Assembly: GCA_002269645.1 (NCBI GenBank)
Contig: NIVC01001095.1
Coordinates: forward strand, 248,001 to 312,000
Origin: Macrostomum lignano
Lineage: Eukaryota
DNA length: 64,000 nt
Direction of reading: 5' to 3'
Part shown: piece by piece, positions 9,631-29,905 of the stretch
Position numbering within the stretch: the first letter of the stretch is position 1
Layout of the letters: each line of letters begins with the position of its first letter
The notes under the pieces: generated by a model
Databases searched by the model: none
What the model saw: only the letters and a program-made list of their open reading frames with translations
Told to the model about the DNA's origin: nothing
Program-made: the position numbers and the translations under genes

Positions 9631-9669
<39 letters not shown>

Positions 9670-9756: not shown

Positions 9757-9787
<31 letters not shown>

Positions 9788-9973: not shown

Positions 9974-10011
<38 letters not shown>

Positions 10012-10457: not shown

Positions 10458-11030
10458 GAATGTAGCCACCAGAATACCCCTAGACATGAATGTAGCCACC
10501 AGAATACCCCTAGACATGAATGTAGCCACCAGAATACCCCTAGACATGAATGTAGCCACCAGAATACCCCTAGACATGAATGTAGCCACCAGAATACCCC
10601 TAGACATGAATGTAGCCACCAGAATACCCCTAGACATAAATGTAGCCACCAGAATACCCCTAGACATGAATGTACTCACCAGAATACCCCTAGACATAAA
10701 TTTGCCCACCAGAATACCCCTAGACATAAATGTAGCCACCAGAATACCCCTAGACATGAATGTACTCACCAGAATACCCCTAGACATGAATGTAGCCACC
10801 AGAATACCCCTAGACATAAATGTAGCCACCAGAATACCCCTAGACATGAATGTAGCCACCAGAATACCCCTAGACATGAATGTAGCCACCAGAATACATA
10901 CCCCTAGACATGAATGTAGCCACCAGAATACCCCTAGACATGAATGTAGCCACCAGAATACCCCTAGACATAAATGTACCCACCAGAATACCCCTAGACA
11001 TAAATTTACCCACCAGAATACCCCTAAAAA
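10458..11030. repeat. 30-bp minisatellite (GAATGTAGCCACCAGAATACCCCTAGACAT)
   Basis: 10-aa periodicity in the ORF track (MNVATRIPLD); the unit shortens to about 28 bp near 10900. Confidence 0.96.
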
Positions 11031-11509
11031 TAGTACCCTAAGCATCGTAATTATGATACAAAGACTGCTGTAAGAACAGCCCTTCACCGAAGAAAAACTA
11101 CACAAATAAGAATTGCAAGTCGCATTGTATCAATGCAAAGCTACTTATGTTATTAACCCAAGTACAAAAATAAGTAAACATCTATAAAAATGCAAGGGCT
11201 TTTTGAATGCCAAACATTCGGTTTGAAATAATTTCTTTAACCAACTTTACAATATATATTTTATAAATCATTAAGACAAAATAAGAAATACAAATGCCAA
11301 GCTTCAGATACTACTCATGCATAAATTAGCAAGCTTAATGCCAAATAAAATTACAGACAAAGATTTCAGTGGATAAGGGAAGTTTAATGAGTCGGGGTTC
11401 GATGAGGGTAGAGACTGGAGTTTGTATTGGGTCAGGATGCCTTTTTGCCTTGTTAAGTTTAAAATGCTTATGAAATTATATATCAATATATCAATGAGCA
11501 TTAAGTCCA

Positions 11510-12135
11510 ATTGGGTTCAGTGGGTCAACTTTTATTGGGTCAGAGGACCATACCAATGAGTCAATGTATCACTGAGTCATGGATCAGTGGGTTAAAGGTT
11601 CACCGGGTCAATGGACCAACGGGTCAAAGGTCACTGGGCAAGGGTGCAATGGGTCAAGGGTCACTGGGTCAAAAGTGCAATGGATCCAGGGTTCAATGGG
11701 TCAAGGGTCATTAGGTCAAGGGTCATTGGGTCAAAAGTACAATGGGTAAAGGGTGCAACGGATCAAGGGTGTAATGGGTCAAGGGTCACTGGGTCAAGGG
11801 ATAACTGGGTCGAGGGTGCAAAAGGTCAAGGGTTCAATGGATCAAGGGTCACTGGGTCAAGGTTGCAATGGGTCAAAGGTAGTAGGTCAAGGGTCACTGT
11901 GTCAAAGGTAATAGGTCAAGGGTCACTGGGTCAAGGGTGCAATGGGTCAAAGATATAATGGGTCACTGGGTCAAGGGTGCAATGGGTCAAAGGTGTAATG
12001 GGTCAAGGGTCACTGGGTCAAGGGTGCAATGGGTCAAAGGTGTAATGGGTCAAGGGTCACTGGGTCAAGGGTGCAATGGGTCAAAGGTGTGATGGGTCAA
12101 GGGTCACTGGGTCAAGGGTGCAACGGGTCAAGAGA
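11510..12135. repeat. Degenerate GGGTCAAGGGT-rich tandem repeat
   Basis: Recurrent GGGTCA motifs in irregular units that become more regular after about 11900. Confidence 0.85.
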
Positions 12136-12247
12136 CCAAAGGTTCAAGGTTTAATGAAACATGCAACAGATAAGTTTTATCAACAACTTTGATCCACGAA
12201 TCAATCAACCAGTGAATCAGAAACAGGTTAATAAGCGGCACCAGCGG

Positions 12248-15200
12248 CTACTCAGCCCGTTGAAAAGCGAACACCATGTACAGAGTGGCCGCTTCCCACT
12301 CTTCCATGCTGAGGGTGCCAACCGGTCCGTTCCGGTCGCGCTCGTCTTCCTCTGTGTCGCACCGGCCATCGCCGTTAAGGTAGGCCTGAGCGGCCCGGTA
12401 ATCGCCTTCAACTTGACTTTTCAGTTCCACGCCATCGGCATTGGGGTAGGGCTCCAGGCTCTGCATCACGCCTAGCAGGCTGCGCCACTCCGGCTGGGTC
12501 ACGTGATCGCGATAGAACTTGGCGAAGTTCTGGCGTAGAGTGCAACGAAGGCCGTACTCGGAGCAGAGCTGTTCTAGAACTGGGAAGTACACGAGGTACT
12601 CTGGGCAGTCTTGAACCTGTCTGAGCATGAGATCAATGGCGGGACAATGACTTTATTAGGGTCGATAAAATAATACCCAGGGACTAAAAATTTACATTGC
12701 AAAGTCGAAAGGTTAGACCGGAAGTCGAATATTTCTAAGATAGGTGCAACGGGCAGAAACGGGGAGTTGAGGATTTGCATGAAATCAAACTGGTCCAGAT
12801 GTTGAGAATTTCCAGGAAAGGCTAGAAAAGAATTCAAGGATTTCTAAGAGACTCTAGGCCAAATTTGAGGATTTCCAGGAAAGGCCAGCTAACTGGAAAT
12901 CGAAGATTCCTAAGAATTTAAAGCAAATCGAGAATTACTAGAAAAGCGGAACCGGAAGTCGAGGATTTCCAGGAAACGCAGGACCGGAAGTCGATGATTT
13001 CACAGAAAAGCCTCACTGGAAGTCGATAATTTCTAAAAAGGCCTGACCGGAAGTCGACGATTTCTAAGAAAAGCCTGACTGGAAGTCGATGATTTCTAAG
13101 AAAGTCCTGACCGGAAGTCGATGTTTTCTAAGAAAGGCTAGACCGGAAATAGATTATTTATTAAGGAAAGGCTAGACCGGATGTAGATTATTTATTTAAG
13201 AAAGGCTAGACCGGAAGTCGATCATTTATTAAGGAAAGGCTAGACCGGAAGTCGATTATTTTTTGAAGGCTAGACCAGAAGTAGATTATTTATTTAAGGC
13301 TAGACCGGAAGTAGATTATTTATTTAAGAAAGGCTAGACTGAAAGTAGATTATTTATTTAAGGCTAGATCGGAAGTAGATTATTTATTTAAGAAAGGCTA
13401 GACTGAAAGTAGATTATTTATTTAAGGCTAGATCGGAAGTAGATTATTTATTTAAGAAAGGCTAGACTGAAAGTAGATTATTTATTTAAGGCTAGATCGG
13501 AAGTAGATTATTTATTTAAGGCTAGACCGGAAGTAGATTATTTATTTAAGAAAGGCTAGACTGAAAGTAGATTATTTATTTAAGGCTAGATCGGAAGTAG
13601 ATTATTTATTTAAGGCTAGACCGGAAGTAGATTATTTATTTAAGGCTAGACCAGAAGTAGATTATTTATTTAAGGCTAGACCGGAAGTAGATTATTTATT
13701 TAAGGCTAGACTGGAAGTAGATTATTTATTTAAGGCTAGATCGGAAGTAGATTATTTATTTAAGGCTAGACCGGAAGTAGATTATTTATTTAAGGCTAGA
13801 CCGGAAGTAGATTATTTATTTAAGAAATGCTAGACCGGAAGTCGAACATTTCCAGGAAAGACTAGAATAGTTAGAAATCTCTTAAAAAATGTGGAGGCCA
13901 GCGTCAGCAAAATAAAGCGCTCACTTCTCCAGACTGAAATGATACTTGCAGCCGAACAGCGGCACCTGCTGAGTCTTGACAGCCGACGAGCTGAATGTCA
14001 CATTGTAGACGCCGTTGCCAAAAGCGGCCTCAGAGCCGGGCTTTCGACGCAGCCGTCTGACAATCTCGTTGGCGTCTGGCAGGGTGCCAATAAAATAGCC
14101 GCCAGGCAGCAGTGATTCGCAGGCGTTCCGGACAAACTGCCTGGCCGCTTGGTAGCTTTGAAAGCAATAGTGCAGCGAGAACTGGCAACTGACCAGGTGG
14201 AACTGCGGCCATGCCGGCTGTAGTGTTGGAACCATTTATAGTTGATATGTTAGTTTTAGCAGAAAATCAAGTAACAGTAGCTATCAATTTCTGTTACACT
14301 ACGACCAACTGTTGACTCAATTATCGATTTCTGTTACACAAAAATTAACCGTTAAGCAAATTATCTATTTCTGTCACACTACGCCTAACTAGTGACTTAA
14401 TCATAGATTTTTGTTGCATTGAAATTAACCCCGCCTGGACTTTGGTCCGATGCAGAAGCGGACGAAATTCACCCGTTTTTAGTCCGATTTTTACATCGGA
14501 CTAAGCTGCGGACCAAATGTCGGGTGAATCGTCCGATTACTTTAGACTGTTCGTCCAAATTTCAACCGATTTCTCGTCCGCTTCCAATCCGGGCCATAAG
14601 CCATGAACTTTTCAAATGCTTTCAATTTTGTTTGCTCTTCAGGGCAGGTAGTCTCTCTGTTAGCGTTTGCATAAGGCACTGTTTCTTAACTTTGATGCTA
14701 ATTATATTCAAGAATAAACTGAGCCAATCTTTCAATACGCAGCTTCCAGCGTCTGTCTTTCTGGCCTTACTTTAACCGGTACAATTTTTTAATCTAGCAG
14801 AAACAACCGTACAGCTAACACAGCTATTTAAATAATTATAGGAACCCATACTAGGGATCCTTTAGTTTGGAAATAGTCTGGCCCGCTACAAAATATGGCT
14901 GTTTCTTTGGCTGATTCCATGCGGAAACACCGATGTAATTAGACGATTCTAGGCGCAAGAAACTGCCAAAAAGCCGCAATAATTCGGCGTGATTTAGTCA
15001 TCAGTTTTCAAGCGAGTTTTGTAAGTCGATTGCGTTATACTACAAGTAATTGCAAAATGGACTATTCACCTCCATTTTATGGTTATTATCACGCTCTACT
15101 TTTAATCCATCGACTTTTTTTCCAGAAATATGTCCGACCAAGCTCAGGACACATGGCAATTTTCCCGGTATCCTTCCAGGGTAGCCGCTATAGCTGATAC

Positions 15201-18200
15201 GCGATCGAGCATGTTACGCCATATCAGCGATCTGCGCTCCCCCTTGACGGAAGCCAGAAGGCGTGGCGTCACGTTTTTTCAGCGTAGAGACAAAAGTTAT
15301 CCTATTTGTTGAGGAATTGGTAGCAATCGACAGACTGTCCGATCCGTCGGCGTCGACGCAGGCTTCAGTAAACATTAATACGCCCAAATCGCATCCCGAC
15401 GTACAGGAAGGTGCCACCATCCTTGTGTCATGCCCAACTTTCTTCCGGCTGGTATCAAAACAGATGGAATTTTCTATGTCGAGTCGCTCACGACAAGCCA
15501 AGTTCTGTGTATTTACCCTCGACCTGTAGTATGCATGCACTCGCTAGTCAATTATTATGCATTGCAGCATTTTACTGCCAATCCGTACACGTATAACAGT
15601 ATTATCCTTTAAATGTCTAACATTTAAATTCAGGCTGCAACTTACTTGGTCGACACGGCAGCTGCTGACCAGAGCAAGTACTACGAATACGCCGTCGTAT
15701 CCACTTCACCTACGCCGGCCGTATCTCGCTGTAGACAGCTCAGTGACCAGAACAACCCAATACTTGCTACTCTTATATGGTAACGCTTAAGCTACTCAAA
15801 TGCTTACATACTTATCTTTTGTACAGCTCGATGCATACTTGTTGCTGCTGTTGGCTCTCTGGCTAATACAATGGATTTGTAGGTCTTGTCACGTCATAAA
15901 ATCTATACCAATTAAATATTCGCACTAATTCTACCGTCACCGATCTTCAGCCCACTGCATGGCGAAGCATGATCCGAGACCTGCTGCATTGTCAGAAAAG
16001 GAGAATACAGGAAAACGAAAGCTGGCGAGAAGTCACAAGTCTGACAAGAAGTCAAAGAAAAGTAAGTCGTATAAGCCTCCGACTGCTGCCGCGGCGGCGG
16101 CCCCTCAAACTGCTGCCGAAATGGCGCCCCCGACTGCTGCCGAATCAGAAGACGGGATGAAAACCAGCAAATTGAGGATCCGCAGCAAGAAATGCAGGGC
16201 TATAAGATTGAGAATAAGGAGCGATTTTTCGTATTCGAATACAAAAAACTTTCACATGCGTAGGGAGGTCGTGTCCACATCAAGCACTACTGCGTCGCTC
16301 ATTGTATCTCATCAGCGTGGAGCGGTCGGGCAAGTAGCTATTGGCGAGGAGGCACAGATTATTACCGCGAAGACAAATCGCCGGAAGGCCAAGCGCTGGC
16401 TTGGCACCTTGATCAAGAGGCCATTCCAGAGGAAGGCCGAGGCTACTGGCGAGGTGGCCATGACAAATGAGCATGCCGCACCAGTTGACCTTCCTAGAGC
16501 TTGCTCGTCATGCCACAGCCTCCTCATAGAGCTTCAACGCTCCATGAGCCTAGTGCGTAAGTACTGTACCGGTGTACCAGTGCGGTATAACATATTGTAT
16601 TATGTTATATTACATATGTTACATTATTCAGTACTGATGCGAACGCGCTCTTTCACAATTATTCGATAGGTGCTGAACTCCGCAAGAAAGCGTCAACGGA
16701 GCAGGTCTTCAAAGGCCAGCTACGAGCGTAGATGCGCTTAAGGAACAAAACAATGTACTAAGGAGAATGGAGTCGTCACTTCTCCGCGGACTCCAAACAG
16801 AACAGCGGAGCATGCCACACTAGAGCACAGAGCGGCGCAGTGCAACGCCTTACTAACGCAAGCGTCGACCATGCTCTGTAGCAACGTATCGGCAGCCGCC
16901 GCTGCTGCGACCGTCGACCTGTTTGACGAAGATCGACAAGAAGCCGTCCACGCCCAAGAGCGTGAGGAGAACGACGCAGACCAGGGCTTTGCCGTACAAG
17001 CCGACAACGCCTTGTCCGCGGCACAGACGCGTGCCTTGCTTAATGCATGTGCAGCAAAAGGCTCCACAGCCGATGAAGCCTCTTTGTCTGCCTCAGTGTC
17101 AAAAGTGCCGTTTTCTGAACGCAGCCTGCTGCGGTGTCTATTTAGCGATGCGGAGTTCAGTAACAGCAGGATCTCCAGTCGCAAGTCGCAGGGCCACGTC
17201 TGCCTGGCAGCCAATCCCGCAAAGGTTGCCACCACAGAACTGTGGCTATCAACTGAAGGAGTCGATTACTCTCCACGCGACCTCAAGCGCTCGTTCCTTA
17301 TTATTTCTATTAGTTTTAAAATCTCATTCTAGGTGTACTGAGACGGCTCGAAAGCGCTCTGGACAATCGGTTTGCACCGGAGGAAGAAGTGGTGCTGACT
17401 CGGCACCTGAATCTGTTGTGATCCGTATTATAACGGAAGGCAACACGGAAGGCAATCAACAGACAAACGAGGCGGAGGAGCATGCCGTGCCTACTCATTT
17501 TCCTACGAATTCTGCAACGACATCGACTGCACTACGCTTCAGACGTTACTGAGCTTGAGGGTAAGGGCCAAATGCGGGACATGTTGCACGAACTGATCAA
17601 GTTGATTGGTGTCCCGGTGATTTCTCATATTAAATATTTACATTTACGGGTAAGTATAAGTATGTAAGTATGCGGTGTATTTAAAATTTTTTTATCTCCT
17701 GATTTGATGCGTCTAGCTATAGTCTCTGAAACCCCTATAATTACTATTCTAATATACCTACTAGAATATTAGACTACTTTTCCGTCCGCATTTCACCCGC
17801 TTTTAATCCGCCTGCTCGTTCGATTTTTCCTTATGGAAAAAATGCATTATCAATTGGACGAACTATCGAATAAGTAAGCGGACAAAAGAACCGGACCAAA
17901 GTCTAGGCGGGACTGTTAGGTCAATTATCGATTACTGTTACACTAAAATTACCGTTACGTTAGTTATGGATTTCTATGTTAAGCTAAGTTAACTCGTTGA
18001 CATAATTATTAATTTCTATCAAATTACGTCTAACTGCTGACATAGCTATTGATTCTTGTTACACTACTACTAACTATTGACTGAATTATCGATTTTTGTT
18101 ACCCTACTACTAACTATTGACTGAAATATCGATTTTTGTTACCCTACTACAAACTATTGACTGAAATATCGATTTTTGTTACCCTACTACTAACTATTGA

Positions 18201-18936
18201 CTGAATTATCGATTTTTGCTACCCTACTACTAACTATTGACTGAATTATCGATTTTTGCTACCCTACTACTAAATATTGACTGAATTATCGATTTTTGTT
18301 ACCCTACTACTAACTATTGACTGAAATATCGATTTTTGTTACCCTACTACAAACTATTGACTGAAATATCGATTTTTGTTACCCTACTACTAACTATTGA
18401 CTGAAATATCGATTTTTGTTAAACTTCGACAAACTGTTGACTGAATTATCTATTTTTGTTACACTACATGTACTAATAACTATTGATTAACTATCGATGT
18501 CTGTTACACCACAATTGACAACTACATTAATATTATAGCTCACCTGCAGATCCCGCAGCCGTACAGCAGTAGCGTCGGCCACGTGAAACTCCGCCCTAGG
18601 CAGGCGACCCCTGCCGTCTCGCTGCTGCTGTTCGGCCATCTCGCCGTACCTCCTACGGCACTGCTCCACCGACACGTCGGCAATGTCAACAAACACAATC
18701 TTAGCGACGCCGCCTTTTCGCCATTTGAGCAGGTCGCCGCCTTTCCCTGAGCACAGGTCCAATACGCGAATGTCGCTATTGATAAACTGGCGTTCGATAA
18801 TACGCAGGTGAGAGCCAATCAGGACGCTCTTCACCCAGTTGTTGAAGTTGCGCAAATAGAAGGCCCGGCTTTCCGCTCGGGACGCGATGCTCGACTGCAG
18901 CACCTGGTTGTAGTGCTGGGCGACCTCCTGGCCAGC
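12248..18936 (-). CDS. RNMT: mRNA cap guanine-N7 methyltransferase, three conserved exons; the start codon is not inside them
   Basis: Exons 18544-18936 (phase 0/0), 13925-14217 (0/2) and 12248-12620 (2/stop), all GT-AG with matching phases. Motifs: VAQHYN, LRNFNNWVKSVLI, VLDLCSGKGGDLLKW, FHLVSCQFSLHY, LLPGGYFIGTLPD, CPEYLVYFP, LYMVFAF. About 353 aa with an added Met. Confidence 0.95.
12880..13850. repeat. About 30-bp intronic minisatellite (AAGGCTAGACCGGAAGTAGATTATTTATTT) in the last RNMT intron
   Basis: Homogeneous core at 13250-13830 with degenerate flanks. Confidence 0.92.
14430..17911. mobile_element. Non-autonomous CACTA/CMC-like DNA transposon (3.48 kb) carrying degraded cargo exons
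   Basis: TIRs CCCGCCTGGACTTTGGTCCG (from 14430) and CGGACCAAAGTCTAGGCGGG (to 17911), 19/20 match. 2-bp TSD AC at 14428-14429 and 17912-17913. Many subterminal GTCCG/CGGAC motifs. The interrupted intronic repeat resumes on both sides. No transposase recognised. Confidence 0.75.
15130..17560 (+). pseudogene. Multi-exon cargo gene(s) of unknown function with several frameshifts (Lys-rich N-terminal segment, coiled-coil segment)
   Basis: Exon-like blocks at about 15130-15525, 15634-15779, 15959-16556, 16670-17260 and 17332-17560, several with canonical splice sites (e.g. GTAAGT at 16557, TAG|G at 16669/16670). Continuous reading needs single-base shifts near 15290, 16725, 16805 and 17415. Confidence 0.55.
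17912..18480. repeat. 40-bp minisatellite (CTGAAATATCGATTTTTGTTACCCTACTACTAACTATTGA); related degenerate copies at 14280-14429
   Basis: Period of 40 between 18121 and 18161. Confidence 0.9.
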
Positions 18937-19079
18937 CTGGGGGAAGGGGAAAAATGGGGCGACTCTCGCATGATAGGGGCGAAACTTTTAATGTCGGGGA
19001 AATACTTAAACGAGGGCCATTGTAAACTGATACCGGCTTATTCCTAATTTCAAGGGCGATTTTTCTATGATAGAAACGA

Positions 19080-19770
19080 TTTTCTAATTAGAGGGGATAT
19101 TCTAATTAGAGAGGCCATTTTCTGATTAGAGAGGCCATTTTCTGATTAGAGAGGCGATTTTCTGATTAGAGAGGCGATTTTCTGATTAGAGGCGATTTTC
19201 TGATTAGAGAGGCGATTTTCTGATTAGAGAGGCGATTTTCTGATTAGAGAGGCGATTTTCTGATTAGAGGGAATTTTCTAACAAGAGAGGCAGGCGATTT
19301 TCTGATTAGAGAGGCGATTTCTAACTAGTGAGGCGATTTTCTAACTATTAAGGCGATTTTATAAATAGAGAGGCGATATTCTGATTAGAGGCGATTTCTA
19401 ACTAGTGAGGCGATTTTCTAACTATTAAGGCGATTTTATAAATAGAGAGGCGATATTCTGATTAAAGGCGATTTCTAACTAGTGAGGCGATTTTATAAAT
19501 AGAGAGGCGATATTCCAATTAGAGGCGATTTCTAACTAGTGAGGCGATTTCCCATTTATTGAGGCGATTTTATAAATAGAGAGGCGATATTCTAACTAGA
19601 GAGGCGATTTCTAACTAGTGAGGCGATTTTCTAACAATTGAGGGGATTTTTTAACTATTGAGGGGATTTTCTAACTATTGAGGGGATTTTCTAACTATTG
19701 AGGGGATTTTCTAACTATTGAGGCGATTTTTTAACTATTGAGGCGATTTTCTAACTATTGAGGCGATTTT
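19080..19770. repeat. About 20-bp degenerate minisatellite (GAGGCGATTTTCTGATTAGA / GAGGCGATTTTCTAACTATT)
   Basis: Tandem variants located between ALG14 and RNMT. Confidence 0.88.
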
Positions 19771-21040
19771 CTATTCTACGTGACAAAACATTTTCTACGA
19801 CACAAAGACTAGGCCATGTAAAAAGAGAAAGTATTTATTTTGCTTTGAAAAATTGAAAAAATCAAAAAAACAACAAGCGAGGATTCAAATACTTAGAAAG
19901 AGGAAATTTTAAGTGCATGTACAATATATATTTTACTCTAAGAAAATCAGTTAGAGTTGACTAATTTACTCACTAGAAAAAGGTATAATTAATTAAGTAT
20001 TAATCAATATCAATAGCCATGTGAGACTTTATTGTTAATCTCCAATTAGAAGATCAAAAAATCTGATTTAGTAGCAGTACACTACTGTAAGCAGTGTAAA
20101 ATATTCTTCGAGACAATTTAGAGGAAAGTAGTTGAGTATAAATATATGCATACATAATGATGATAACATGATAATGACACACGACTTATTTATAACGATT
20201 TAATAATGAGAATAGGCAAAGTTTCAATGGCACAGCAAGGTGATCGGATTTCATATAAAGACTGGTCACTCAAACCATAATATGTGTTATTGAGCAATGT
20301 AACTACTCATAAATGGTTTTAAAAAAAATTGCAAATATTTATTAATGCATATGATACTGTACATAAATATGGTTTCACAAAAAGAAAAAATGTTTTCAAG
20401 TTCAATGCAAATAAACTAGGAATGCCGGAAAATAACTTTGTAGTCGAATATACTGTAATTTAAAGTACACATGATTGAATGTTTCTTACATAACCGCTAC
20501 TTGAATGCCGCTAAACCCCACACTTGATCATTCAGTTAGACCGCTAAATACCACACCTGATAATTTAGCTAGTTTAAGCCTGAATCAAGTACTCACGCCC
20601 CATATTATGTGGTGGAATAAAAATAATTAATTAATTTTGTAATAAAAAATAAATAAACTAAATACACAGCTTATCAACAACAGTAGTAAGCGTTAGCAGT
20701 AGTAGAACGCGCGCATTAAAAATAAAATTAGACTACTAAATTATGCTTTATTTTGTAAATAAGAGAAATATTATATTTATATTTGATCATTTTGCTTTAC
20801 TTGCTACTCAAGGCAAATAAGTAGTGCAGTTAGAATATCAAGAGGAAATTGAAAACAAAGTCAATACATAACTACTGTATCTAGACTTACACTGCATAGT
20901 ACGAGTTATTCATCTAAACTAAACAAGCAAGCAAGGCACACTAGACAAGCCACAGATTAAGACAGAATGAACCCAATATAGCTCAATGCGAGGTCAGTAA
21001 AGGTCAGATTCTAAGGTCAGAAAAAGCCATTTAGCTGCTA

Positions 21041-23915
21041 CTAAACAATCCGACCCAAATAGCGAGCCCTGGGGAACTGGTCCAGCAGCTCGGGCCACTG
21101 CACGATCACGTGATCAGCCAAGTAGTACAGGATGCGACCGCTCAGCGATAGGGAGTTAACCCGACAAATGCTCTCCACGAATACGATCCGGCAGTCTTTT
21201 AGTAGCAGAAGACGGTAGAGAAATGCCGCGAAACAGACTGGGATGCAGGTGCCCGGCCCGTTGCAGAGCACCTGTGGTTTCGGAGATTAATTTCTAATGT
21301 AAGCATAAATCCAACATCTTTATTCTTATAAATCTCACACCTTGATCCCATAAATCCTACAACTGAACTCCCACAAATCCCACACTCTTATCCCCAAAAA
21401 TCCCACACCTTGATTCCCATAAATCCCAACCTTGATTCCTATAAACCCCACACCTTGATTTCCATAAATCCCACACTCTTATCCCCAAAATTCCCACACC
21501 TTGATTCCCATAAATCCCAACCTTGATTCCTATAAACCCCACACCTTGATTCCCATAAATCCCACACTCTTATCCCCAAAATTCCCACACCTTGATTCCC
21601 ATAAATCCCACACCTTGATTCCTATAAACCCCACACCTTGATTCCCATAAATCCCACACCTTGATTCCTATAAACCCCACATCTTGATTCCCATAAATCC
21701 CACACCTTGATTCCTATAAACCCCACACCTTGATTCCCATAAATCCCACACCTTGATTCCCATAAATCCCACACCTTGATTCCTATAAATCCCACACCTT
21801 GATTCCTATAAATCCCACACCTTGATTCCTATAAATCCCACACCTTGATTCCCATAAATCCCACACCTTGATTCCCATAAATCCCACACATTAAATACCA
21901 CAAATCCCACACTTCAATTCCATAGTTGCAAACCTGCATTTCAAACTTCAGACCCACTGACTCACCAAGTCAGGCTTCTCCCAAGCCACCAAAGGGAAGC
22001 AGTAGGCAGCAGATCGAACAGTAGTCAGCACCGAGGTCAGGTAAGATTGCAGCACCTCTCGACTGCGCGGAATCGAGTGAATGGAGAACTGGGGAGAACA
22101 AACATGGGCGATGAAAGTTGAAAGCTAACTGCATTAATATCTGTAGGATTTGAAATTTATTATTTTGATTCTAGAATTATGGGGCATTCTCCGTCAGGGC
22201 TAAGCAGTTCAGAGCCATAGGGATTTGCCTTCCCCGCGTTTGAAAAATTCTTCAGAGGGAATTCTTCTCCAGGGACGGGGGATTCTCCTCCAAAATGAGA
22301 GATTCTTTAGGGGAATTCTTCTTCAGAGTGAGGAAACTCTTTAGGGAGCTTCTCCTCTAAGGACGGAAAATGCTCCTTCAGAAACAGGGGATTCTTTGTA
22401 CGAAGACTTCTCCAGAGAAGAGGGGATTCTTCAGGAGAATTTTCCAGAGAATCCTCCAGAGATGGAGATTTTCTAGGGGAATTCTCCTTCAAAGACAGGG
22501 GATTTTCTAGGAGAATTCTCCTACAGAGATGGGAGAGTATCTTAAGAAATTCCCTTCATGGAAAGAATAAATTTTCGTTATTTGAATTGTTAATGAATTA
22601 TTTATCACACGGGCTGGGCGATTGGCTAATGGGCTTGTCATTCCCATAGTTCAAAATGACAATCAACTCACATCATTGCTATTTAACTCGCTGATTTTGA
22701 TTTTCTCCGGACTCATAGCATCCGAGCTGGCAATCACGTAGAGTCGGGGAGAGTAGTGCTTGCTCAGGCTATTAACTAGTCGCAGAATTTCAGTGGTGTG
22801 ACCGCCTGTTTTTTATTTTAACAAAAGTTATGTTCTTCCGTAATTATGGCTGTGGATTACTACGGCAACTATGGCAAAATAGGTACTTATAATGGCGATG
22901 GAATCACCCACAAGATTAATAAATAAAATAATAAAATAGTTGAATATACCTGCCCCAATTAGGCTAGATAAGCAACTGACAGCTCAGCCGCAGCTATTGC
23001 GCGGCGCATCTGAAGGCTGCGTACGGCTGTTCAGTCCAAGGATTGGGAGGTCGCCACACACACCCTCAATTACACCAGCTAATGCTGGCACCCATTTTAC
23101 AGCTGGGTGAACTGAAGCAATGCAGAGTTAAGTGTTTTTCTCAAAGACACAAATTGTTTGGACAAGAGGCTACACCTTTAGATCATGGCAAGGTAAACTA
23201 AGTATTGTAGTAATGATAATAAGTGTAAAACTTATTGCTATAACTCTGAAAACTACAGTACTTGTAGTATGCCTTACAACAGGGGACCAGCAAACAGTTC
23301 ATCTCAAGGGCCAGATAGAAAATACAGCCCATGGCTGCGGGCCATGAAAAGGATGAGAGTGGAAAGTAGAGAGGATAAAAGATGAGAATTTAAATGAGAG
23401 TAAATGGGAGAGTAAAAAGGGGATAGAGGTGAGAGAAGAGGAGAGAGAGAGGAGAGAGGAGACAGAGGAGAAAGGAGAGAGAAGACAACAAACCTTGGAG
23501 TAGGCCAGATTGCTATTGCGAAGTTTCAAAGGACCCGAGGACCAGATAGAGGCCCACAGGCCAGAGTTTGCCAAGCCCTGCCTTACTATTTGTATAATCT
23601 TTTATTGAGAATGAAATAAGAAATTAACAAAGCCAATCTCCAAATCAAGTAAAACATTAGTAAGCTAATAAAATTGCTCACCATCTTGTTGAAGATATTC
23701 TTGATGACTAACTCAACAAATTACATTATATAAGTTTTGCAATGAATGATTTATTAAATTAAAATAGCCTCACCTGATCCTGCCACAATCATAGTTCTCA
23801 ACTGAGCACACTTGGGAAACACATTGTTAATATATCCAAAAATTTGCAACTCTACTATGAGTAGTCGCAGTAGTAGAAATCCAATTATAGCAATTGTTAG
23901 CAATGATAACAGCAT
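21041..23915 (-). CDS. ALG14: UDP-N-acetylglucosamine transferase subunit ALG14 (209 aa, N-terminal membrane anchor)
   Basis: Exons 23774-23915, 22672-22805, 21966-22088 and 21041-21271 total 630 nt with consistent phases. Motifs: IVAGSGGHTTEILRL, IPRSREVLQSY, VLCNGPGTCIPVC, VFVESICRV, VQWPEL, YLGRIV*. Confidence 0.96.
21340..21900. repeat. About 23-bp minisatellite (CCTTGATTCCCATAAATCCCACA) in ALG14 intron 3
   Basis: Tandem array. Confidence 0.92.
22970..23157 (-). mobile_element. CORE-type SINE, 5'-truncated copy
   Basis: Closely matches the copies at about 34700, 51680 and 61320. Contains CCCATTTTACAGCTGGGTGAACTGAAGCAATGCAGAGTTAAGTGT, which resembles the MIR/CORE domain. Confidence 0.75.
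23280..23580. mobile_element. hAT-type MITE with an internal GA-rich tract
   Basis: Termini CAGGGGACCAGCAAAC and GTTTGCCAAGCCCTG; 8-bp TSD CCTTACAA/CCTTACTA. Related copies at about 32317-32556 and 51940-52415. Confidence 0.7.
23682..23707 (-). other. Candidate 26-nt micro-exon in ALG14 intron 1, ending in ATG|GTGAGC
   Basis: Minus strand reads ttgagttag|TCATCAAGAATATCTTCAACAAGATG|gtgagc. It enters in phase 1 (matching ALG14 exon 1) and exits in phase 0 (matching the RNMT exon starting at 18936). Confidence 0.4.
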
Positions 23916-25299
23916 CTGAAATTATATTAGAACACTAACTTGAAATTTTAAAATACCACTCAATACATAATCAATAACTAACTTAATAAACTCCAAAAAG
24001 AATATAATTTTATAGTATTAAAATAAAGTAGTGGGGTTTCAAAAATATTTTATTTATTCATATGAAAATCCCTAGGCAATGTCTTATAAACAAAAAGCCA
24101 ATAGCCTATATACTATTTCCTAGAAGTTGTTATTGTTATGATGACTGACACTATATAAACAGGCCTAGCAAAATGGTTATTTTTATGGTCACCATATGTA
24201 GAGGCATAATTCTAATTTTCCACGTTAAATTATTTTGAGTTAAAAAATTGACTCAATAAGTTAAAACAAGTTAGTCCATAGCAGTCAATAGTCTACTGAG
24301 TTCACTAAATGGCATAATAATGAGCAACCCAGAACTAGTTGGAATACAAACTAGGAACTTTGCATATGAATACCATTGAAGGGACTTGGGTACATGTCAA
24401 GGCAAAGTTCCAGAACATAAATGGCACCAGCGATAGTGTAAGACCAAGATAGCCACATATCAAGATGGCCACAACATTGAATTTCTTTGGCTCTGCTCTC
24501 TTTTTATCATTAATTAGCAATATAGTAGCTATGCCTATTGTTATATTAATTATTATGTTTAATCAATCATATTCATAAATACTAATGCAATATGCCTAAT
24601 AGTTTGAAACTAATTACCTATAATATAAAAACTTTAATCTTTTTCTGTGTTTATACCAATTTATTCCCTATCATTATATCTATCAAATCTATCACTATAA
24701 GTTTATTAAGAAACCATTGCTACTAGTAATGCTACACAAAAATTAAGATAAATATGCAACAGGGCAAGGTATTTATTTTGTGTTAGTAGGGGTCGGACAA
24801 TATTGAATTTTCAAGATTTTTGAGATTGGCCTCTTTGAGATATTTGAGATTCAATCGAGATTTGAGACATATGGTGGAACAACAAAAAATATTTAATATC
24901 TGAAATAAGGCCAAACACTAAAATAAAGTACATATTAAAATAGAAACCTTGATTTATTGATGACAACTGGCCGATTATTGGACTATTTGTATTTTTTCTC
25001 TCAAACATGGTTGGCAGTAGTATAATATTTGCTTACAACTGATAGCAAAGTAATGGATCAGGTGAGGTGGCTTTGGATTTTGGAAGATATGATCTTGTGA
25101 GAAAACATGGTACTTAGGCTAAATGCAGTTCAAGATCTGGCGGGAAGCATTCTTTAATAGCTTGTAAAAATGAACTTGCAAGCAGTAGGTCTATTAGACA
25201 AGCTCCCAAGAACCATCTCCTGAAGCTATAGAATTAAAAATGTTAAATAAAGTATTGCCAACCCAGTAAAACAAAGTATTGCCAACCATTGTCAACAAA

Positions 25300-25620
25300 T
25301 GTGCCAGCGACCCAGGTTCACTTCCAAGTGCAGTCACATTAATTTGGGGCTGAATTGGAATCTCGACTTGGCTCTGCTCGTGCAATTAATGGCCTTGAGA
25401 GCCAACTGCCCAAGGCGCAGTGAAGTGTACATGCCTAACAATAATATAAAGTTAGGGCCGCTATACACTCCTGTGTGTATGCCTGCATATATATCTGCGC
25501 ACTTGTATGCCTGCTCAGGGAAGTCAGTGGAATGGGTAGTAATGCCTCTCACCATTTGTATGCCTATGTCGCTTAAAGTGTGCCAGGGTACACACAACCC
25601 CCTTGCCTCTAATAAAAAAT
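25300..25620 (+). mobile_element. tRNA-derived SINE family 2 (5'-truncated) with A-rich tail
   Basis: Homologous to 51218-51572 (-) and 41745-42080 (+, older); ends in TAATAAAAAA. Confidence 0.72.
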
Positions 25621-25907
25621 TGTCAGCAAAAAAATACAACTCATTGAAATAACCAGATTATACATTAAATATTCCCAGCAGATATAAGCTACCAACCAAC
25701 AAACTGGCAAGACAAAAGAAACCGTCAATGTCATATGTTGAGTGTTGATCTTGGACTGTCAGCTTCAAGTAGCCAATGAATTGCTGGAACATTAATTGTT
25801 TCAAGCAGAAATGCAGTTATATTACCAATAAATTTATAATAGTAAATATACTATTCAAAACAAGCATGCATTCTCTAATGGAAGCTAACCATCTTTATGC
25901 TATAAAC

Positions 25908-26311
25908 CAAGGGTCCCCAACCTGCAGCCTGTGGGCCGCAATGGCCCGCGGCACCTTCTAGTAGTTTGCATTATATGCGGCCTGCCAAGTCTATCACTAG
26001 ATTTCACTGCGGCCCCCGAAAATGTTAAAATTTTCCTAGCTATATTGAAAATATTCCCAGAAATCTCTTACCCTCCCCACTGCTAGAAGCGATGCTTCAA
26101 TTCATTTGGATTGCTATTTTAGCTACTCCTAGTGCACAAATGTACACGCAGTCAAGATTTGAAATGAAAAGTAGGAAAGAATGCTAGCTAATATCAATAT
26201 GGTTCAAGGCAAAGGAGGTGGGCCGTTATGTTTGTGTATTAGCATGCGGCCTGCACACCCTAAGCCAGTTGTCAATGCGGCCCGCCGCCTGTAGAAGGTT
26301 GGAGACCCCTG
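25908..26311. mobile_element. hAT-type MITE
   Basis: TIRs CAAGGGTCCCCAACCT and AGGTTGGAGACCCCTG; perfect 8-bp TSD CTATAAAC at 25900-25907 and 26312-26319. Confidence 0.88.
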
Positions 26312-26613
26312 CTATAAACTATACATTCTTTGTAACATACAAAATTTAAACAAAGTATTGAAGTTGACACCATTAGGCTCTATGATATGATGCTACATGC
26401 TTCTTATAGATCGAAATGTTTTTACAAACATTTGTTTTTTATCTCAAATCTCAACATTTTTTGAGATCATGAAGTCAAGATTGAGATTTGAGAAAACCCC
26501 CAAGATCTCAGATCTCGAGATCAAGATTGAGATCTCGTCTAACCTAATGTGTTAGGTAGAGTTGCTCGCTTAATTAATAGCAAATAAATAAAGCTTAAGA
26601 TCAACATTTATGG

Positions 26614-26662
26614 CGAAAACCAACGCGTTTCAACCCATTAGGGCCGTCGTCAGGGTATATTT
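26614..26662 (-). ncRNA. Second, inverted copy of the putative hammerhead ribozyme
   Basis: Reverse complement of the 28420 copy, differing in the stem II loop (TAAT versus TAGT). Confidence 0.6.
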
Positions 26663-28419
26663 TATCACTGAACGAAACACTCAATATAAATAAGCTCTCA
26701 AGCTTCTTTTTCAACAAGATAGACGGGATACCATAGAACGGCAAGATCATCACGGGGTCATCCGGCTTTTTACTATGATTCTGTTGCAGTCTGCCAGTAA
26801 CCTTATCAGTGACAAACTTGAAAATCAACCGACTAATGAGATTTTTTGGGTATCCGTTCATACTGAAAATCCTAGTCAAATTTTTCACCTCCTCATCAAA
26901 CGCAGCCCAGAAACTACACAGAGAGTAAGCTCTGTGCAGCATACAATGGATCAGGCCAATATTCCACTGTTTCGGACAGAGGGCATTGAAATTCAACAGT
27001 AAACCAGTAAACGTGGGCTTGCGATAAACCCGAGTAGAGACTTGGCCACTGCTCAGATCAACCTCAACATCGAGAAACGGAAGTTTTTTACCTCCCATCT
27101 CAACGGTGAATTGGATGTTGCTGTGGGTTGAATTCAGAGCCCGAAAAAACTCTTGGTACTTAGCCCGGTCATCAAAAATGACAAAAGTGTCATCAACATA
27201 GCGCTTGTAGAAAGTTGGCGCACACTCAAGCGACATCCACTCCGTTTCCCAGTGCGCCATGCAAACATTGGCCAGAGTAGGAGCAAGCGGGCTTCCCATG
27301 GCACAACCATCAATCTGGCGATAATATTTGTCATCAAACATGAAGATGCCAGAGGTAGCAAAGCCTAACAACTTTTTGAACACAGTCTTTGGTAACCCAG
27401 GCGGATTCATATTGTACACATGATCAGTGGCGAGATCAATAGCCAGCTTCAAAGGGACATTGGTAAAAAGCGAAGTCACGTCAAAACTGCAGAGAAAATC
27501 CTCACTTTTCGGACTGATTTGACTTAAGGCTTGAATGAACTGGCAATTAGAGTTGACGGAGAATTCCTTTGGTATGCATGGTTTGATCAGAGAATCCAAG
27601 TATCTGGCCAGTTCATTAACACTGTTTCATTAACACTGTAACACTGTAACGTGATTAACACTGCTGAGTATGAAGAGCAGTGTTAAGAGAAGGTTACTGG
27701 CAGACTGCAACAGAATCATAGTAAAAAGCCGGATGACCCCGTGATGATCTTGCCGTTCTATGGTATCCCGTCTATCTTGTTGAAAAAGAAGCTTGAGAGA
27801 TCTTTTCGGAAATGGTACAACACTCCGATTAGGATTGTCTTTCGCACTGCCAAGGTGGGTCAATTTGTCAGCAATCTCAAGTCCCGTGTTCCTCGTGCTC
27901 TAGTTGCAGGTGTCGTCTATAAATTTTGTTGTTCTGAAGATCAGAATATCTCTTACGTGGGAAAAACCAAAAGACACCTGCACACCAGAGTTAGGGAGCA
28001 TTGGCTGAAAAAATCTGCTATCTAGGACCACCTTCTGGAATGCAAGGGCTGCTGTGACAGAGAACAGATTGAATTGTTTAAAATTATCGACCGTGCTAAC
28101 TCTGAATTCAAGCTTAGCATTCTTGAAGCGCTGCACATCAAAGCTCAAAATCCCAGTCTCAATGTGCAATTGCTACATAGTGGTGCGGGCCACCTTCTTA
28201 GGGTGTTTTGAGTTTGACTATTTTTTGTTGCGCGTACATTTTGTTTTTTTACATCTGTTTGCCTTCTCTCTCTCTCTCTCTCTCTCTCATTATTCTCGCT
28301 TAACTCCAACCCCTAGTTTTTTTATGTTTTTCGTACATTGGTTACCCTCCCGTTTTCAATTTGACACTTGAGATAGTACAATCGTTTGCTTATTTATATT
28401 GAGTGTTTCGTTCAGTGAT

Positions 28420-28468
28420 AAAATATACCCTGACGACGGCCCTAGTGGGTTGAAACGCGTTGGTTTTC
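28420..28468 (+). ncRNA. Putative minimal type-I hammerhead ribozyme in the PLE terminal repeat
   Basis: ACC-CTGACGA-C-GGCCC(TAGT)GGGTT-GAAAC-GC-GTT-GGT: CUGANGA and GAAA cores, stem II, palindromic short stem III (ACGCGT), GUU cleavage triplet. Confidence 0.6.
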
Positions 28469-28838
28469 GCCATAAATGTTGATCTTAAGCTTTATTTAAT
28501 GTGTTAGGCTACATGCTTAATATAGTAAATAAATATCTATTAGTGAAGCTATAATAAAAGCTAAAGCCAAAGGAATGATTATAATATAGGGACCTAAAAT
28601 AATACAACTCCAATATAGTATATTTTAGCATATATTTCTCTAATTATTACTCATAGGAAATAAGTGAATTATAAAGACCTAGGCTTGCCGCTTATTATTA
28701 TCTATTTAGACACTTAGTCTGAGATGTCTTTCATTCATTAATATCCACTTGATTTTTCTCTTACCACTTAATAGTGCCAACTCATACATGTGCAACAGGG
28801 CGCATTGCACAAGAATAGGCCTATTCCAATTTAAAAAA

Positions 28839-29905
28839 GGCAGTGCTTATTTAGCCGGCACCGGTCGAATAAGTTCGCTACTATTTAGCCGGCAGTCCTA
28901 CCCCACTGCCGGTCAAATAAGCTCGTCACTATTTAGCCGGCAGTCCTGCCCCACTGCCGGTCAAATAAGCTCGTCACTATTTAGCCGGCAGTCCTGCCCC
29001 ACTGCCGGTCAAATAAGCTCGTCACTATTTAGCCGGCAGTCCTGCCCCACTGCCGGTCAAATAAGCTCGTCACTATTTAGCCGGCAGTCCTGCCCCACTG
29101 CCGGTCAAATAAGCTCGTCACTATTTAGCCGGCAGTCCTGCCCCACTGCCGGTCAAATAAGCTCGTCACTATTTAGCCGGCAGTCCTGCCCCACTGCCGG
29201 TCAAATAAGCTCGTCACTATTTAGCTGGCAGTCCTGCCCCACTGCCGGTCAAATAAGCTTGTCACTATTTAGCCGGCAGTCCTGCCCCACTGCCGGTCAA
29301 AAAAGCTCGTCACCATTTAGCCGGCAATCCTGGCCCCCAATGGCCACGCTGGTCAAAATACATTTATATATTTTATAACTGCGCACTGCTCGTCATGACC
29401 TTGAATTAATAATTTAACATACTAAAAGCTAATTACTTATACTACAATTTTGGAGTTTTTCGATAAAGGTGTTTGCAGTGGTTTTTTGGCTTTAATGAGT
29501 GGTTTTGATTCAGAGATTAAAGTGAAAGTAAAACATGCATAATTAATTTTTTATTTGTTTATGTGTCTTCTGCTGCTACAAATAATTTCCGGAATTTTGT
29601 TGTTGCCCTGCCCCACTGTTTAGCATCTCTGAGATCGGTGAGATGCAAGACTTTCAGAAACAATTAAACAAACTTGAAGGCAAGTAATAAATTGTACTGA
29701 ATCTGCATTGATCTATATTCGCTGTACCTACTTTTGTATTGCCCAAAGTTTAAATATCTCGAATAAATATATATAATCGCGTGGCCATTGGGGGCCAGGA
29801 TTGCCGGCTAAATAATGACGAGCTTATTTGACCGGCAGTGGAGCAGGACTGCCGGCTAAATAGCAGCGAACTTATTCGGCCGGTGCCGGCTAAATAAGCA
29901 CTGCC
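28839..29905. mobile_element. Mutator-like/foldback non-autonomous element with a 48-bp tandem array inside the left TIR
   Basis: Termini GGCAGTGCTTATTTAGCCGGCA and TGCCGGCTAAATAAGCACTGCC; 9-bp TSD TTTAAAAAA at 28830-28838 and 29906-29914. The 48-bp unit is present about 10 times on the left and about once on the right. Confidence 0.85.

What the first reader, a model, noticed from the sequence alone, without database searches (positions are those of the whole stretch)
18936..23915. RNMT has no start codon of its own and sits behind ALG14: candidate ALG14-RNMT operon with a spliced-leader-donated AUG
Seen: the first conserved RNMT exon begins at a strong acceptor (polypyrimidine-CCCCAG|GCT GGC CAG GAG GTC GCC CAG CAC TAC AAC) in phase 0. 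It has no Met before the conserved VAxHYN motif. It lies 2.1 kb downstream of the ALG14 stop on the same strand, and about 0.7 kb of that gap is minisatellite. I found no phase-0 ATG-bearing donor in the gap; the ATG-containing candidates near 20590 and 20885 are phase 1. ALG14's own ATG directly follows an AG acceptor (23916). Known: flatworm spliced leaders end in AUG that can serve as the initiator, and SL trans-splicing resolves operons. Inference: SL-AUG plus this exon gives M-A-G-Q-E-V-A-Q-H-Y-N, which would make the cap methyltransferase dependent on trans-splicing for its own translation.
Basis: partly seen in the sequence, partly recalled or inferred. Interest (0 to 1): 0.8.

Follow-up and report, generated by a model that had tools for sequence, protein, structure and literature searches.

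The report
Flatworm RNMT borrows its start codon
In the flatworm Macrostomum lignano, the gene for the mRNA cap methyltransferase (RNMT) has no start codon in the genome and almost certainly gets its AUG from the spliced leader; this mechanism is already known in flatworms, so this is one more example of it.

Summary
The window is Macrostomum lignano (assembly Mlig_3_7, scaffold NIVC01001095.1, 0 mismatches over 26.7 kb). On the minus strand, ALG14 (23915..21041) is followed 2,104 nt later by RNMT. The first RNMT exon starts at a CCCCAG| acceptor (18936) in phase 0. No in-frame ATG precedes the SAM-binding motif.

The published M. lignano spliced leader (SL) ends in ATG. Joined at 18936 it reads M-AGQEVAQHYN, an almost complete PF03291 domain. 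GenBank CDSs at three paralogous loci, and an older UniProt model, all begin exactly at this acceptor and carry no Met; the GenBank CDSs are flagged 5'-partial. That fits gene boundaries set at mapped SL sites. The gap has no credible in-phase cis exon and diverges between homeologs as introns do.

The SL-donated AUG is therefore strongly, though indirectly, supported (about 0.85). I saw no SL-containing read myself.

The operon is plausible but unproven (about 0.5). One ALG14 copy and RNMT share the transcriptional-unit prefix Mlig024127. However, the repeat-adjusted spacing (about 1.0-1.3 kb) sits at the published 1 kb cut-off.

SL AUG initiation has been known in flatworms since 2006 and has been noted for Macrostomum. 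This is a new member of a known kind, of low to moderate interest.

The parts
23916..23921 (-). 3' splice acceptor tttcag immediately before the ALG14 ATG. It matches the published trans-splice acceptor motif [T/C]TNCAG.
   Evidence: motif from PMC8629364. In homeolog L001 the GenBank ALG14 CDS is 5'-partial and starts 3 nt after this ATG.
23774..23915 (-). ALG14 exon 1 (ATG...GGATCAG|gtgagg, ends in phase 1)
   Evidence: The spliced product equals GenBank PAA63541.1/PAA72408.1, 209 aa. PF08660, E=6.6e-63.
22672..22805 (-). ALG14 exon 2
21966..22088 (-). ALG14 exon 3
21041..21271 (-). ALG14 exon 4, with stop codon TAG at 21043..21041
18937..21040 (-). Gap between the ALG14 stop and the RNMT acceptor. 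It holds the ALG14 3' UTR plus an intercistronic spacer or RNMT outron. GC is 33%.
   Evidence: It is 94% identical to homeolog L001, the same as most introns (93-96%; 86-89% for the two ALG14 introns with the lowest identity, one carrying a minisatellite), while CDS is 99% identical. There is no conserved island and no credible phase-0 ATG...GT[AG]AG exon.
20747..20752 (-). First AATAAA after the ALG14 stop; candidate poly(A) signal, implying a 3' UTR of about 300 nt
   Evidence: This is inference only; no poly(A) data were seen.
19077..19773 (-). 20-nt minisatellite (35.5 copies) that inflates the gap
   Evidence: Copy number differs in L001.
18937..18960 (-). Polypyrimidine tract plus AG (ccccatttttccccttcccccag): the proposed SL trans-splice acceptor of RNMT
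   Evidence: It is conserved in L001 apart from a 1-nt length change in the T/C run.
18969..18971 (-). ATG in the outron. It is out of frame here and in frame in homeolog L001, so it is not a conserved start.
18544..18936 (-). RNMT exon 1. It starts GCT GGC CAG GAG GTC GCC CAG CAC TAC AAC in phase 0 and has no ATG before the SAM-binding motif.
   Evidence: The GenBank 5'-partial CDS starts at this base.
13925..14217 (-). RNMT exon 2
12248..12620 (-). RNMT exon 3, with stop codon TAG at 12250..12248

Best explanation
RNMT pre-mRNA of Macrostomum lignano is SL trans-spliced at the CCCCAG| acceptor at window 18936 (minus strand). The 35-nt spliced leader ends in AUG, and this AUG lands in frame directly before GCU GGC CAG. 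It is the only AUG upstream of the catalytic motifs, so it serves as the initiator. The product is a 353-aa cap guanine-N7 methyltransferase, M-AGQEVAQHYN..., with no N-terminal extension.

The acceptor probably lies on a precursor RNA that starts upstream of ALG14, making a two-gene operon, with ALG14 itself trans-spliced at tttcag|ATG. An outron driven by a separate promoter in the gap is not excluded.

**Shown:** species identity; the SL sequence (published); the in-frame junction; the absence of any genomic start codon; public gene models that start at the acceptor.

**Inferred:** that SL reads join at this base; that ribosomes start at the SL AUG; that ALG14 and RNMT are co-transcribed.
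For: 1. **Species.** The window equals GCA_002269645.1 NIVC01001095.1 with 0 mismatches over 26,689 bp. The proteins are named Macrostomum lignano.
2. **Spliced leader.** The published SL is CGGTCTCTTACTGCGAAGACTCAATTTATTGCATG. About 30% of genes are trans-spliced (PMC8629364).
3. **Junction.** SL plus exon 1 has its first ATG at the SL 3' end and reads MAGQEVAQHYNQVLQ. The next ATG is 215 nt further on, past the SAM-binding motif.
4. **No genomic start.** There is a stop 15 codons upstream in frame and no ATG between.
5. **Public models.** The GenBank RNMT CDSs are BOX15_Mlig024127g2 (PAA63542.1/PAA72407.1) and g3 (PAA66152.1), on three scaffolds between them. UniProt A0A1I8I107 and A0A1I8HK30 come from an older annotation. 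All begin at AGQEVAQHYN, and the GenBank ones are flagged partial. The Mlig_3_7 annotation set mRNA 5' ends by cutting at peaks of SL-trimmed reads (TBONE pipeline, PMC5730564).
6. **Homeolog L001.** An in-frame ATG lies only 13 codons upstream of the acceptor there, yet the CDS is still 5'-partial from the acceptor. The transcript model must therefore start at the acceptor.
7. **No hidden cis exon.** The gap evolves like most introns (94% versus 93-96%; CDS 99%), and no phase-0 ATG is followed by a good donor.
8. **The product is complete.** PF03291 covers residues 4-351, profile positions 12-314 of 315. Gastropod RNMTs have only about 10 residues before VAxHYN.
9. **The gene is under purifying selection.** There are 6 synonymous and 2 non-synonymous differences between homeologs.
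10. **Operon.** The same-strand ALG14-to-RNMT arrangement is kept at all loci seen: L001, L002 and the duplicate scaffold implied by consecutive accessions. ALG14 (Mlig024127.g1) and RNMT (Mlig024127.g2) share a transcriptional-unit prefix at a duplicate locus. Two unrelated sequences can share a prefix only if an assembled transcript spanned both (naming rule in PMC5730564).
Against: - I saw no SL-containing read or cDNA for this gene. The supplements of four M. lignano papers hold no entry for Mlig024127.
- Exact look-ups of Met-prefixed or SL-peptide-prefixed RNMT found nothing in the protein collection.
- The acceptor CCCCAG does not fit the enriched trans-splice motif [T/C]TNCAG at its second position. 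That motif covers only about 44% of sites.
- For the operon, the stop-to-acceptor distance is 2,104 nt against a published modal spacing of about 100 nt. Subtracting tandem repeats (762 nt) and a presumed 3' UTR of about 300 nt leaves about 1.0 kb, which is at the published cut-off.
- By my inference from accession order, ALG14 at the window's own locus carries a different unit name (Mlig016892.g2).
Confidence: 0.85

Rival explanations
1. RNMT is SL trans-spliced and uses the SL AUG, but it is not in an operon. It has its own promoter in the 2.1 kb gap, and trans-splicing only removes a private outron.
For: About 60% of SL trans-spliced M. lignano genes are not in operons (PMC8629364). The repeat-adjusted spacing here (about 1.0-1.3 kb) sits at or above the 1 kb operon threshold and far from the 100-nt mode. 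At two of the three loci ALG14 has a separate transcriptional-unit name, Mlig016892.
Against: ALG14 g1 and RNMT g2 share the prefix Mlig024127 at a duplicate locus, which implies an assembled RNA spanning both genes. The authors report that repeats inflate operon spacers in this genome and that assembled units tend to break in repeat-rich spacers. The linkage is kept in the diverged homeolog.
Confidence: 0.4
2. RNMT has a conventional cis-spliced 5' exon with its own ATG that annotators missed. It could lie in the gap, in an ALG14 intron (for example caagATG|gtgagc at 23684..23682), or upstream of ALG14. On this reading the 'partial' CDS is only an incomplete model.
For: The GenBank CDS is flagged partial. 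An ATG|GTGAGC string in phase 0 exists in ALG14 intron 1 and is conserved in L001.
Against: Four models, the GenBank ones covering three loci, come from two annotation efforts and all stop at exactly the AG| boundary. They do not stop at ragged coverage ends. Splice-aware assembly would have followed a cis junction. The gap has no good in-phase donor and no CDS-like conserved block. ATG|GT strings are common by chance: similar ones occur at 25555 and 25892. The intron-1 string would need an intron that swallows ALG14 exons 2-4.
Confidence: 0.08
3. The locus makes no SL-initiated protein. Either translation starts at a non-AUG codon or at the internal Met, or this copy is a decaying duplicate.
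For: M. lignano carries many redundant gene copies (PMC8629364). No genomic AUG exists.
Against: The ORF is intact in all copies, with 6 synonymous against 2 non-synonymous differences. The internal Met lies after the SAM-binding motif, so the product would be inactive. All paralogs share the same Met-less start, and BUSCO-level completeness of the species implies a working RNMT.
Confidence: 0.03

Closest known systems
Flatworm SL 3'-terminal AUG used as initiator methionine (Cheng, Cohen, Ndegwa & Davis 2006, J Biol Chem 281:733; Schistosoma mansoni)
   Same: The SL ends in AUG. The AUG is in frame with the recipient ORF. The recipient exon has no start codon of its own. According to PMC9851317, the SL AUG is in frame in 28% of S. 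mansoni trans-spliced mRNAs, and more than 40 cDNAs need it.
   Different: The species is a free-living macrostomorph and the gene is RNMT. Use of the AUG is inferred here from the sequence and from public gene models, not shown by translation assays.
SL trans-splicing and operons in Macrostomum lignano (Wudarski et al. 2017, PMC5730564; Ustyantsev & Berezikov 2021, PMC8629364)
   Same: Same species, same 35-nt SL and the same annotation that fixed this gene's 5' end. Two-gene operons are the commonest class (75%), and trans-spliced genes are enriched for conserved genes.
   Different: Those papers do not discuss SL-donated start codons or this gene pair. The spacing here is at the upper limit of their operon definition.
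Macrostomum cliftonense / M. hystrix genome annotation (Wiberg et al. 2023, PMC10468722)
   Same: The paper states that the Macrostomum SL likely includes the final ATG as a translation start codon, and that trimming it causes annotation problems. That is the artefact seen here as a '5'-partial' RNMT.
   Different: It makes a general remark and names no specific gene.
slORFs (ORFs created by SL addition; slORFfinder, PMC9851317)
   Same: It describes the same concept: an SL supplying the start codon.
   Different: That study covers nematodes, Oikopleura and trypanosomes, mostly with non-AUG NUG codons. Here a canonical AUG starts the main, conserved ORF.

Membership tests
SL trans-spliced mRNA with SL-donated initiator AUG (flatworm type) | The organism performs SL trans-splicing with an SL whose last three bases are AUG | tested here: met
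   The window is M. lignano. The published SL ends ...TTGCATG (PMC8629364).
SL trans-spliced mRNA with SL-donated initiator AUG (flatworm type) | [quoted passage not shown] | tested here: met
   Polypyrimidine-CCCCAG| lies at 18937-18960. No in-phase ATG with a GT[AG]AG donor exists in the gap.
SL trans-spliced mRNA with SL-donated initiator AUG (flatworm type) | SL-containing cDNA or reads joined at that acceptor | not testable with these tools
   The evidence is indirect only. Three GenBank accessions covering three loci, plus two UniProt models, start at this base and lack Met. The annotation pipeline cut 5' ends at SL-read peaks.
SL trans-spliced mRNA with SL-donated initiator AUG (flatworm type) | The SL AUG is in frame with the conserved ORF, no stop lies between them, and no other AUG can yield a functional protein | tested here: met
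   SL plus exon 1 reads MAGQEVAQHYN. The next ATG is 215 nt downstream, past the SAM-binding motif.
SL trans-spliced mRNA with SL-donated initiator AUG (flatworm type) | Translation actually initiates at the SL AUG | not testable with these tools
   This needs N-terminal proteomics, ribosome profiling or a reporter.
M. lignano operon (criteria of Ustyantsev & Berezikov 2021) | Adjacent genes on the same strand with no opposite-strand gene between them | tested here: met
   ALG14 and RNMT are the only annotated genes in window 2248-28936, and both are on the minus strand.
M. lignano operon (criteria of Ustyantsev & Berezikov 2021) | Repeat-adjusted distance between transcripts below 1 kb | tested here: inconclusive
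   The stop-to-acceptor distance is 2,104 nt. Tandem repeats take 697 + 65 nt. With a 3' UTR ending near the AATAAA at 20752, the remainder is about 1.03 kb. The poly(A) site and RepeatMasker content are unknown.
M. lignano operon (criteria of Ustyantsev & Berezikov 2021) | A polycistronic precursor RNA spanning both genes | not testable with these tools
   The evidence is indirect. ALG14 (Mlig024127.g1) and RNMT (Mlig024127.g2) share a transcriptional-unit prefix (naming rule).
mRNA cap guanine-N7 methyltransferase (RNMT/Abd1, PF03291) | A full-length match to the family profile and to solved RNMT structures, with the SAM-binding motif | tested here: met
   PF03291 E=1.7e-101, residues 4-351. 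Human RNMT 3BGV E=1.1e-83 and Ecm1 1RI1 E=3e-29. VLDLCSGKGGDL, HYN and the NFNNW motif are invariant in the alignment.
ALG14 (PF08660) | A profile match across the domain, plus an N-terminal hydrophobic anchor | tested here: met
   PF08660 E=6.6e-63, residues 42-208. The N-terminus is MLLSLLTIAIIGFLLLRLLIV.

The most novel reading that the evidence does not exclude
RNMT's dependence on the SL AUG may be an evolved coupling and not an accident of gene structure. In Lingula and Priapulus RNMT sits head-to-head with FAM210; the same holds in human by my recollection, not checked here. That arrangement implies a shared promoter region in the ancestor. In the Macrostomum lineage RNMT lost this partner and was captured behind ALG14. 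It now needs the TMG-capped SL both to be resolved from the precursor and to be translated. Output of the cap methyltransferase would then track trans-splicing capacity, a feedback between the two cap-related pathways, conserved across Macrostomum or flatworms.
Probability: 0.1. Interest if true: 0.5.

Novelty: new member of a known kind. Interest (0 to 1): 0.25.

Why it matters
**Annotation.** The GenBank and UniProt RNMT entries of M. lignano are labelled partial or fragment, but they are most likely complete proteins lacking only the SL-encoded Met. The same artefact will affect every M. lignano gene whose AUG comes from the SL, so proteome sets and orthology tables undercount complete proteins.

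**Biology.** An essential, conserved enzyme here relies wholly on trans-splicing for its start codon. That makes a clean test case for SL AUG initiation in the one flatworm with stable transgenesis.

**Limits.** The apparent circularity, in which the cap methyltransferase needs the capped SL, is not a paradox. Every RNMT mRNA needs a cap, and the embryo can start from maternal enzyme. The finding does not reveal a new mechanism.

Tried and rejected
- **Homologue search with exon 1 alone.** It returned only hits of 59% identity or less and missed the species' own protein. The full-length query found it.
- **Exact look-up of the 489-aa ORF at 47344-48813 to identify the source.** Not on record.
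- **Rfam and ARAGORN scans.** No SL RNA in the window, only tRNAs. A search for the published SL with up to 3 mismatches gave 0 hits.
- **Exact look-ups of M+RNMT, M+ALG14 and ten SL-peptide (VSYCEDSIYCM...) + RNMT variants, seeking transcript-derived proteins that carry the junction.** None is in the collection.
- **Supplement searches of Wudarski 2017, Grudniewska 2018, Grudniewska 2016 and Mouton 2018 for Mlig024127, Mlig016892, RNMT and ALG14, seeking a 'TRANSSPLICED' flag.** No entry, only RNMTL1. A full-text search for the gene IDs found 0 papers.
- **Hidden cis exon.** Rejected after the donor scan and the homeolog conservation profile.
- **The mini-exon caagATG|gtgagc in ALG14 intron 1 as an SL-like gene or RNMT first exon.** Rejected. 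The real SL is a different sequence, and such strings recur by chance.
- **ALG14-RNMT linkage outside Macrostomum.** Not found. Lingula and Priapulus have FAM210 upstream instead, and no FAM210 is in the window.
- **Interspersed repeats in the gap.** A BLAST of the gap against the rest of the window found none.


Full report
**1. What is in the sequence**

Both genes lie on the minus strand. ALG14 has four exons: 23915..23774, 22805..22672, 22088..21966 and 21271..21041. All have canonical AG|...|GTGAG borders. Its ATG sits directly after tttcag|. The 209-aa product matches PF08660 at E=6.6e-63.

RNMT has three coding exons: 18936..18544, 14217..13925 and 12620..12248. The first is preceded by ccccatttttccccttcccccag| and begins GCT GGC CAG GAG GTC GCC CAG CAC TAC AAC. 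Reading upstream in the same frame gives a stop 15 codons up, with no ATG between. The first in-frame ATG inside the exon lies after the VLDLCSGKGGDL SAM-binding motif, so it cannot give an active enzyme.

The distance from the ALG14 stop to the RNMT acceptor is 2,104 nt. A 20-nt minisatellite takes up 697 nt of it, at 19077-19773. My scan found no phase-0 ATG followed by a GT[AG]AG donor anywhere in the gap.

**2. Where the window comes from**

A homologue search with the spliced 352-aa RNMT returned 'hypothetical protein BOX15_Mlig024127g3, partial [Macrostomum lignano]'. It has 99% identity, full coverage and the same length. Exact look-ups showed that the window's own RNMT and ALG14 proteins are GenBank PAA63542.1/PAA72407.1 and PAA63541.1/PAA72408.1.

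The fetched locus from GCA_002269645.1 scaffold NIVC01001095.1 is identical to window 28936..2248 over 26,689 bp. The organism is thus the free-living flatworm M. lignano, assembly Mlig_3_7.

**3. The spliced leader**

Ustyantsev & Berezikov (PMC8629364) give the single 35-nt SL as CGGTCTCTTACTGCGAAGACTCAATTTATTGCATG, followed in the SL RNA gene by GTAAG. [quoted passage not shown]

Joining this SL to exon 1 gives ...UUGC AUG GCU GGC CAG..., which reads M-A-G-Q-E-V-A-Q-H-Y-N. The SL AUG is the first AUG of the mRNA, and the next one is 215 nt downstream. The SL sequence itself is not in the window.

**4. Evidence that this acceptor is the mRNA 5' end**

I could not look at reads, but the public gene models are informative. 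The Mlig_3_7 annotation assembled 'transcriptional units' from RNA-seq. Its TBONE pipeline then cut them at peaks of SL-trimmed reads and at poly(A) sites to set mRNA boundaries (PMC5730564).

The GenBank RNMT CDSs, which between them cover three scaffolds, are 5'-partial and begin at exactly the first base after the AG. So do two UniProt models from the older ML2 annotation, A0A1I8I107 and A0A1I8HK30. An assembly truncated by low coverage would not stop at the same splice boundary every time. A cis junction would have been followed upstream.

The homeolog L001 (scaffold NIVC01001585.1) gives a further test. It is about 94% identical in non-coding DNA. There, a 1-nt length change in the pyrimidine tract puts an outron ATG in frame only 13 codons upstream (MRKSPHFFPFPQ|AGQEV). 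Even so, the CDS is still called partial from the acceptor, so the transcript model cannot extend upstream of it. In the window the same ATG (18971..18969) is out of frame, so it is not a conserved start.

**5. No hidden exon**

I aligned the window against L001 region by region:

| Region | Identity to L001 |
|---|---|
| CDS | 99% |
| Introns | 86-96% (lowest in the two ALG14 introns, one of which carries a minisatellite) |
| Non-repeat part of the gap | 94% |
| Last 140 nt before the acceptor | 94% |

A 50-nt sliding profile shows no CDS-like island beyond what 5% divergence predicts. The donor at 20897 is not conserved in L001. The string caagATG|gtgagc in ALG14 intron 1 is a chance-level motif; similar ones occur at 25555 and 25892. 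Using it would require an intron that swallows three ALG14 exons.

**6. Is M-AGQEV... a plausible complete protein?**

Yes, on four grounds.
- PF03291 aligns residues 4-351 to profile positions 12-314 of 315, at E=1.7e-101.
- Crystal structures of human RNMT start at the equivalent of residue 22, at E=1e-83.
- Annotated full-length RNMTs of gastropods (Nucella, Babylonia, Littorina) have only about 10 residues before VAxHYN.
- The two homeologs differ by 6 synonymous and 2 non-synonymous codons, so the gene is under purifying selection.

**7. The operon question**

*For.* The genes are on the same strand with nothing annotated between them, and the arrangement is kept in the diverged homeolog. 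One ALG14 copy is named Mlig024127.g1 and the RNMT next to it Mlig024127.g2 (consecutive accessions PAA63541/PAA63542). Prefixes were assigned to clusters of assembled transcriptional units. Two unrelated genes can share a prefix only if an assembled RNA spanned both. ALG14 itself starts at a tttcag| acceptor. In L001 its CDS is 5'-partial, beginning 3 nt after the ATG, which suggests an SL site there too. SL+ALG14 would read AUG AUG CUG.

*Against.* The published operon rule is a repeat-adjusted distance below 1 kb, with a mode near 100 nt. Here 2,104 nt, less 762 nt of tandem repeat, less a presumed 3' UTR of about 300 nt (AATAAA at 20752), leaves about 1.0 kb. That is right at the trough between the two modes. 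At the other two loci ALG14 carries a separate unit name, Mlig016892. From accession order I infer that this includes the window's own locus.

I put co-transcription at about 0.5. The authors themselves note that assembled units tend to break in repeat-rich spacers.

**8. Comparison with what is known**

The flatworm SL AUG was shown to act as an initiator methionine in Schistosoma mansoni in 2006. [quoted passage not shown] All reported parasitic flatworm SLs end in ATG (PMC12582326). For Macrostomum, Wiberg et al. note that the SL likely contains the final ATG start codon, and they deliberately did not trim it, to avoid annotation problems (PMC10468722).

The mechanism is therefore known, and this locus is a further instance. 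The 'partial' flag in GenBank is the annotation artefact it produces. I found no paper that mentions RNMT or this gene pair.

**9. Context noticed on the way**

In Lingula and Priapulus the gene upstream of RNMT is a divergently transcribed FAM210 family gene, not ALG14. No FAM210 is in this window. The ALG14-RNMT linkage is therefore derived in the Macrostomum lineage. This fits capture of RNMT into a trans-splicing-dependent arrangement, but it does not prove an operon.

**10. Verdict**

- The SL-donated AUG reading is supported at about 0.85. It rests on sequence, the published SL and public gene models. Direct junction reads were not seen.
- The operon is plausible, at about 0.5.
- Novelty: a new member of a known kind.
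- Interest: 0.25. The 'cap methyltransferase depends on the capped leader' twist is appealing but not paradoxical.

Noticed in passing
L001:9955-10000 versus window 18937-18971: A 1-nt length difference in the pyrimidine tract puts the outron ATG in frame in homeolog L001 (MRKSPHFFPFPQ|AGQEV). The same ATG is out of frame in the window copy. GenBank still calls the L001 CDS partial from the acceptor.
   Followed up: yes
L001:3620-3625 (equivalent to window 23915-23910): The GenBank ALG14 CDS in the homeolog (BOX15_Mlig016892g1, 208 aa) is 5'-partial and starts at CTG, 3 nt after the genomic ATG that follows tttcag|. This may be a side effect of trimming the SL's terminal ATG twice from SL-ATG+ATG reads. 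I have not explained it.
   Followed up: partly
L003 (Priapulus) 1-9490 and L004 (Lingula) 7345-9618: In both outgroups RNMT lies head-to-head with a FAM210A/B-domain gene. This looks like an ancient arrangement with a shared promoter region. It is absent from the M. lignano window.
   Followed up: partly
window 18047-18467, 19077-19773, 21304-21912, about 12950-13870: Introns and the spacer hold long minisatellites with periods of 40, 20, 23 and about 60 nt. Their copy number differs between the two homeologs. Elsewhere in the window, repeat arrays give long spurious ORFs (for example 2084-3250, 4876-5871, 38461-39912, 49823-50823).
   Followed up: partly
window 22962-23158, 34697-34862, 51672-51876, 61326-61518: A SINE-like repeat of about 195 bp occurs four times (88-94% identical), once inside ALG14 intron 1. 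The copy at 34697-34862 abuts a weak Rfam tRNA hit (34867-34936), which suggests a tRNA-derived SINE.
   Followed up: partly
window 26601-28025: Two Penelope-like retroelement fragments lie in inverted orientation: an RT ORF (PF00078) on the minus strand and a GIY-YIG ORF (PF01541) on the plus strand. Both carry the peptide MILPFYGIPSILLKKKLE.
   Followed up: partly
window 62079-62174 (+): A tRNA-Tyr(GTA)-like gene with an intron. Rfam finds it (59.6 bits) but ARAGORN misses it.
   Followed up: no
window 15959-17552: A GC-rich stretch inside RNMT intron 1 holds ORFs of 150-236 aa on both strands with no Pfam match. It is not annotated in GenBank. It could be a nested or antisense transcript, or only a composition effect.
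   Followed up: no
window 33374-37052 (-), 47344-48813 (+), 56581-58760 (+): Other genes in the window: an RFX-family transcription factor (BCD_RFX domain), a 489-aa single-exon coiled-coil ORF with no family match, and a tubulin-tyrosine-ligase-family gene.
   Followed up: no
The word-indexed homologue search with the 131-aa exon missed the 99-100% identical M. lignano proteins that the 352-aa query found. A negative result from that tool with a short query is therefore not evidence of absence.
   Followed up: yes
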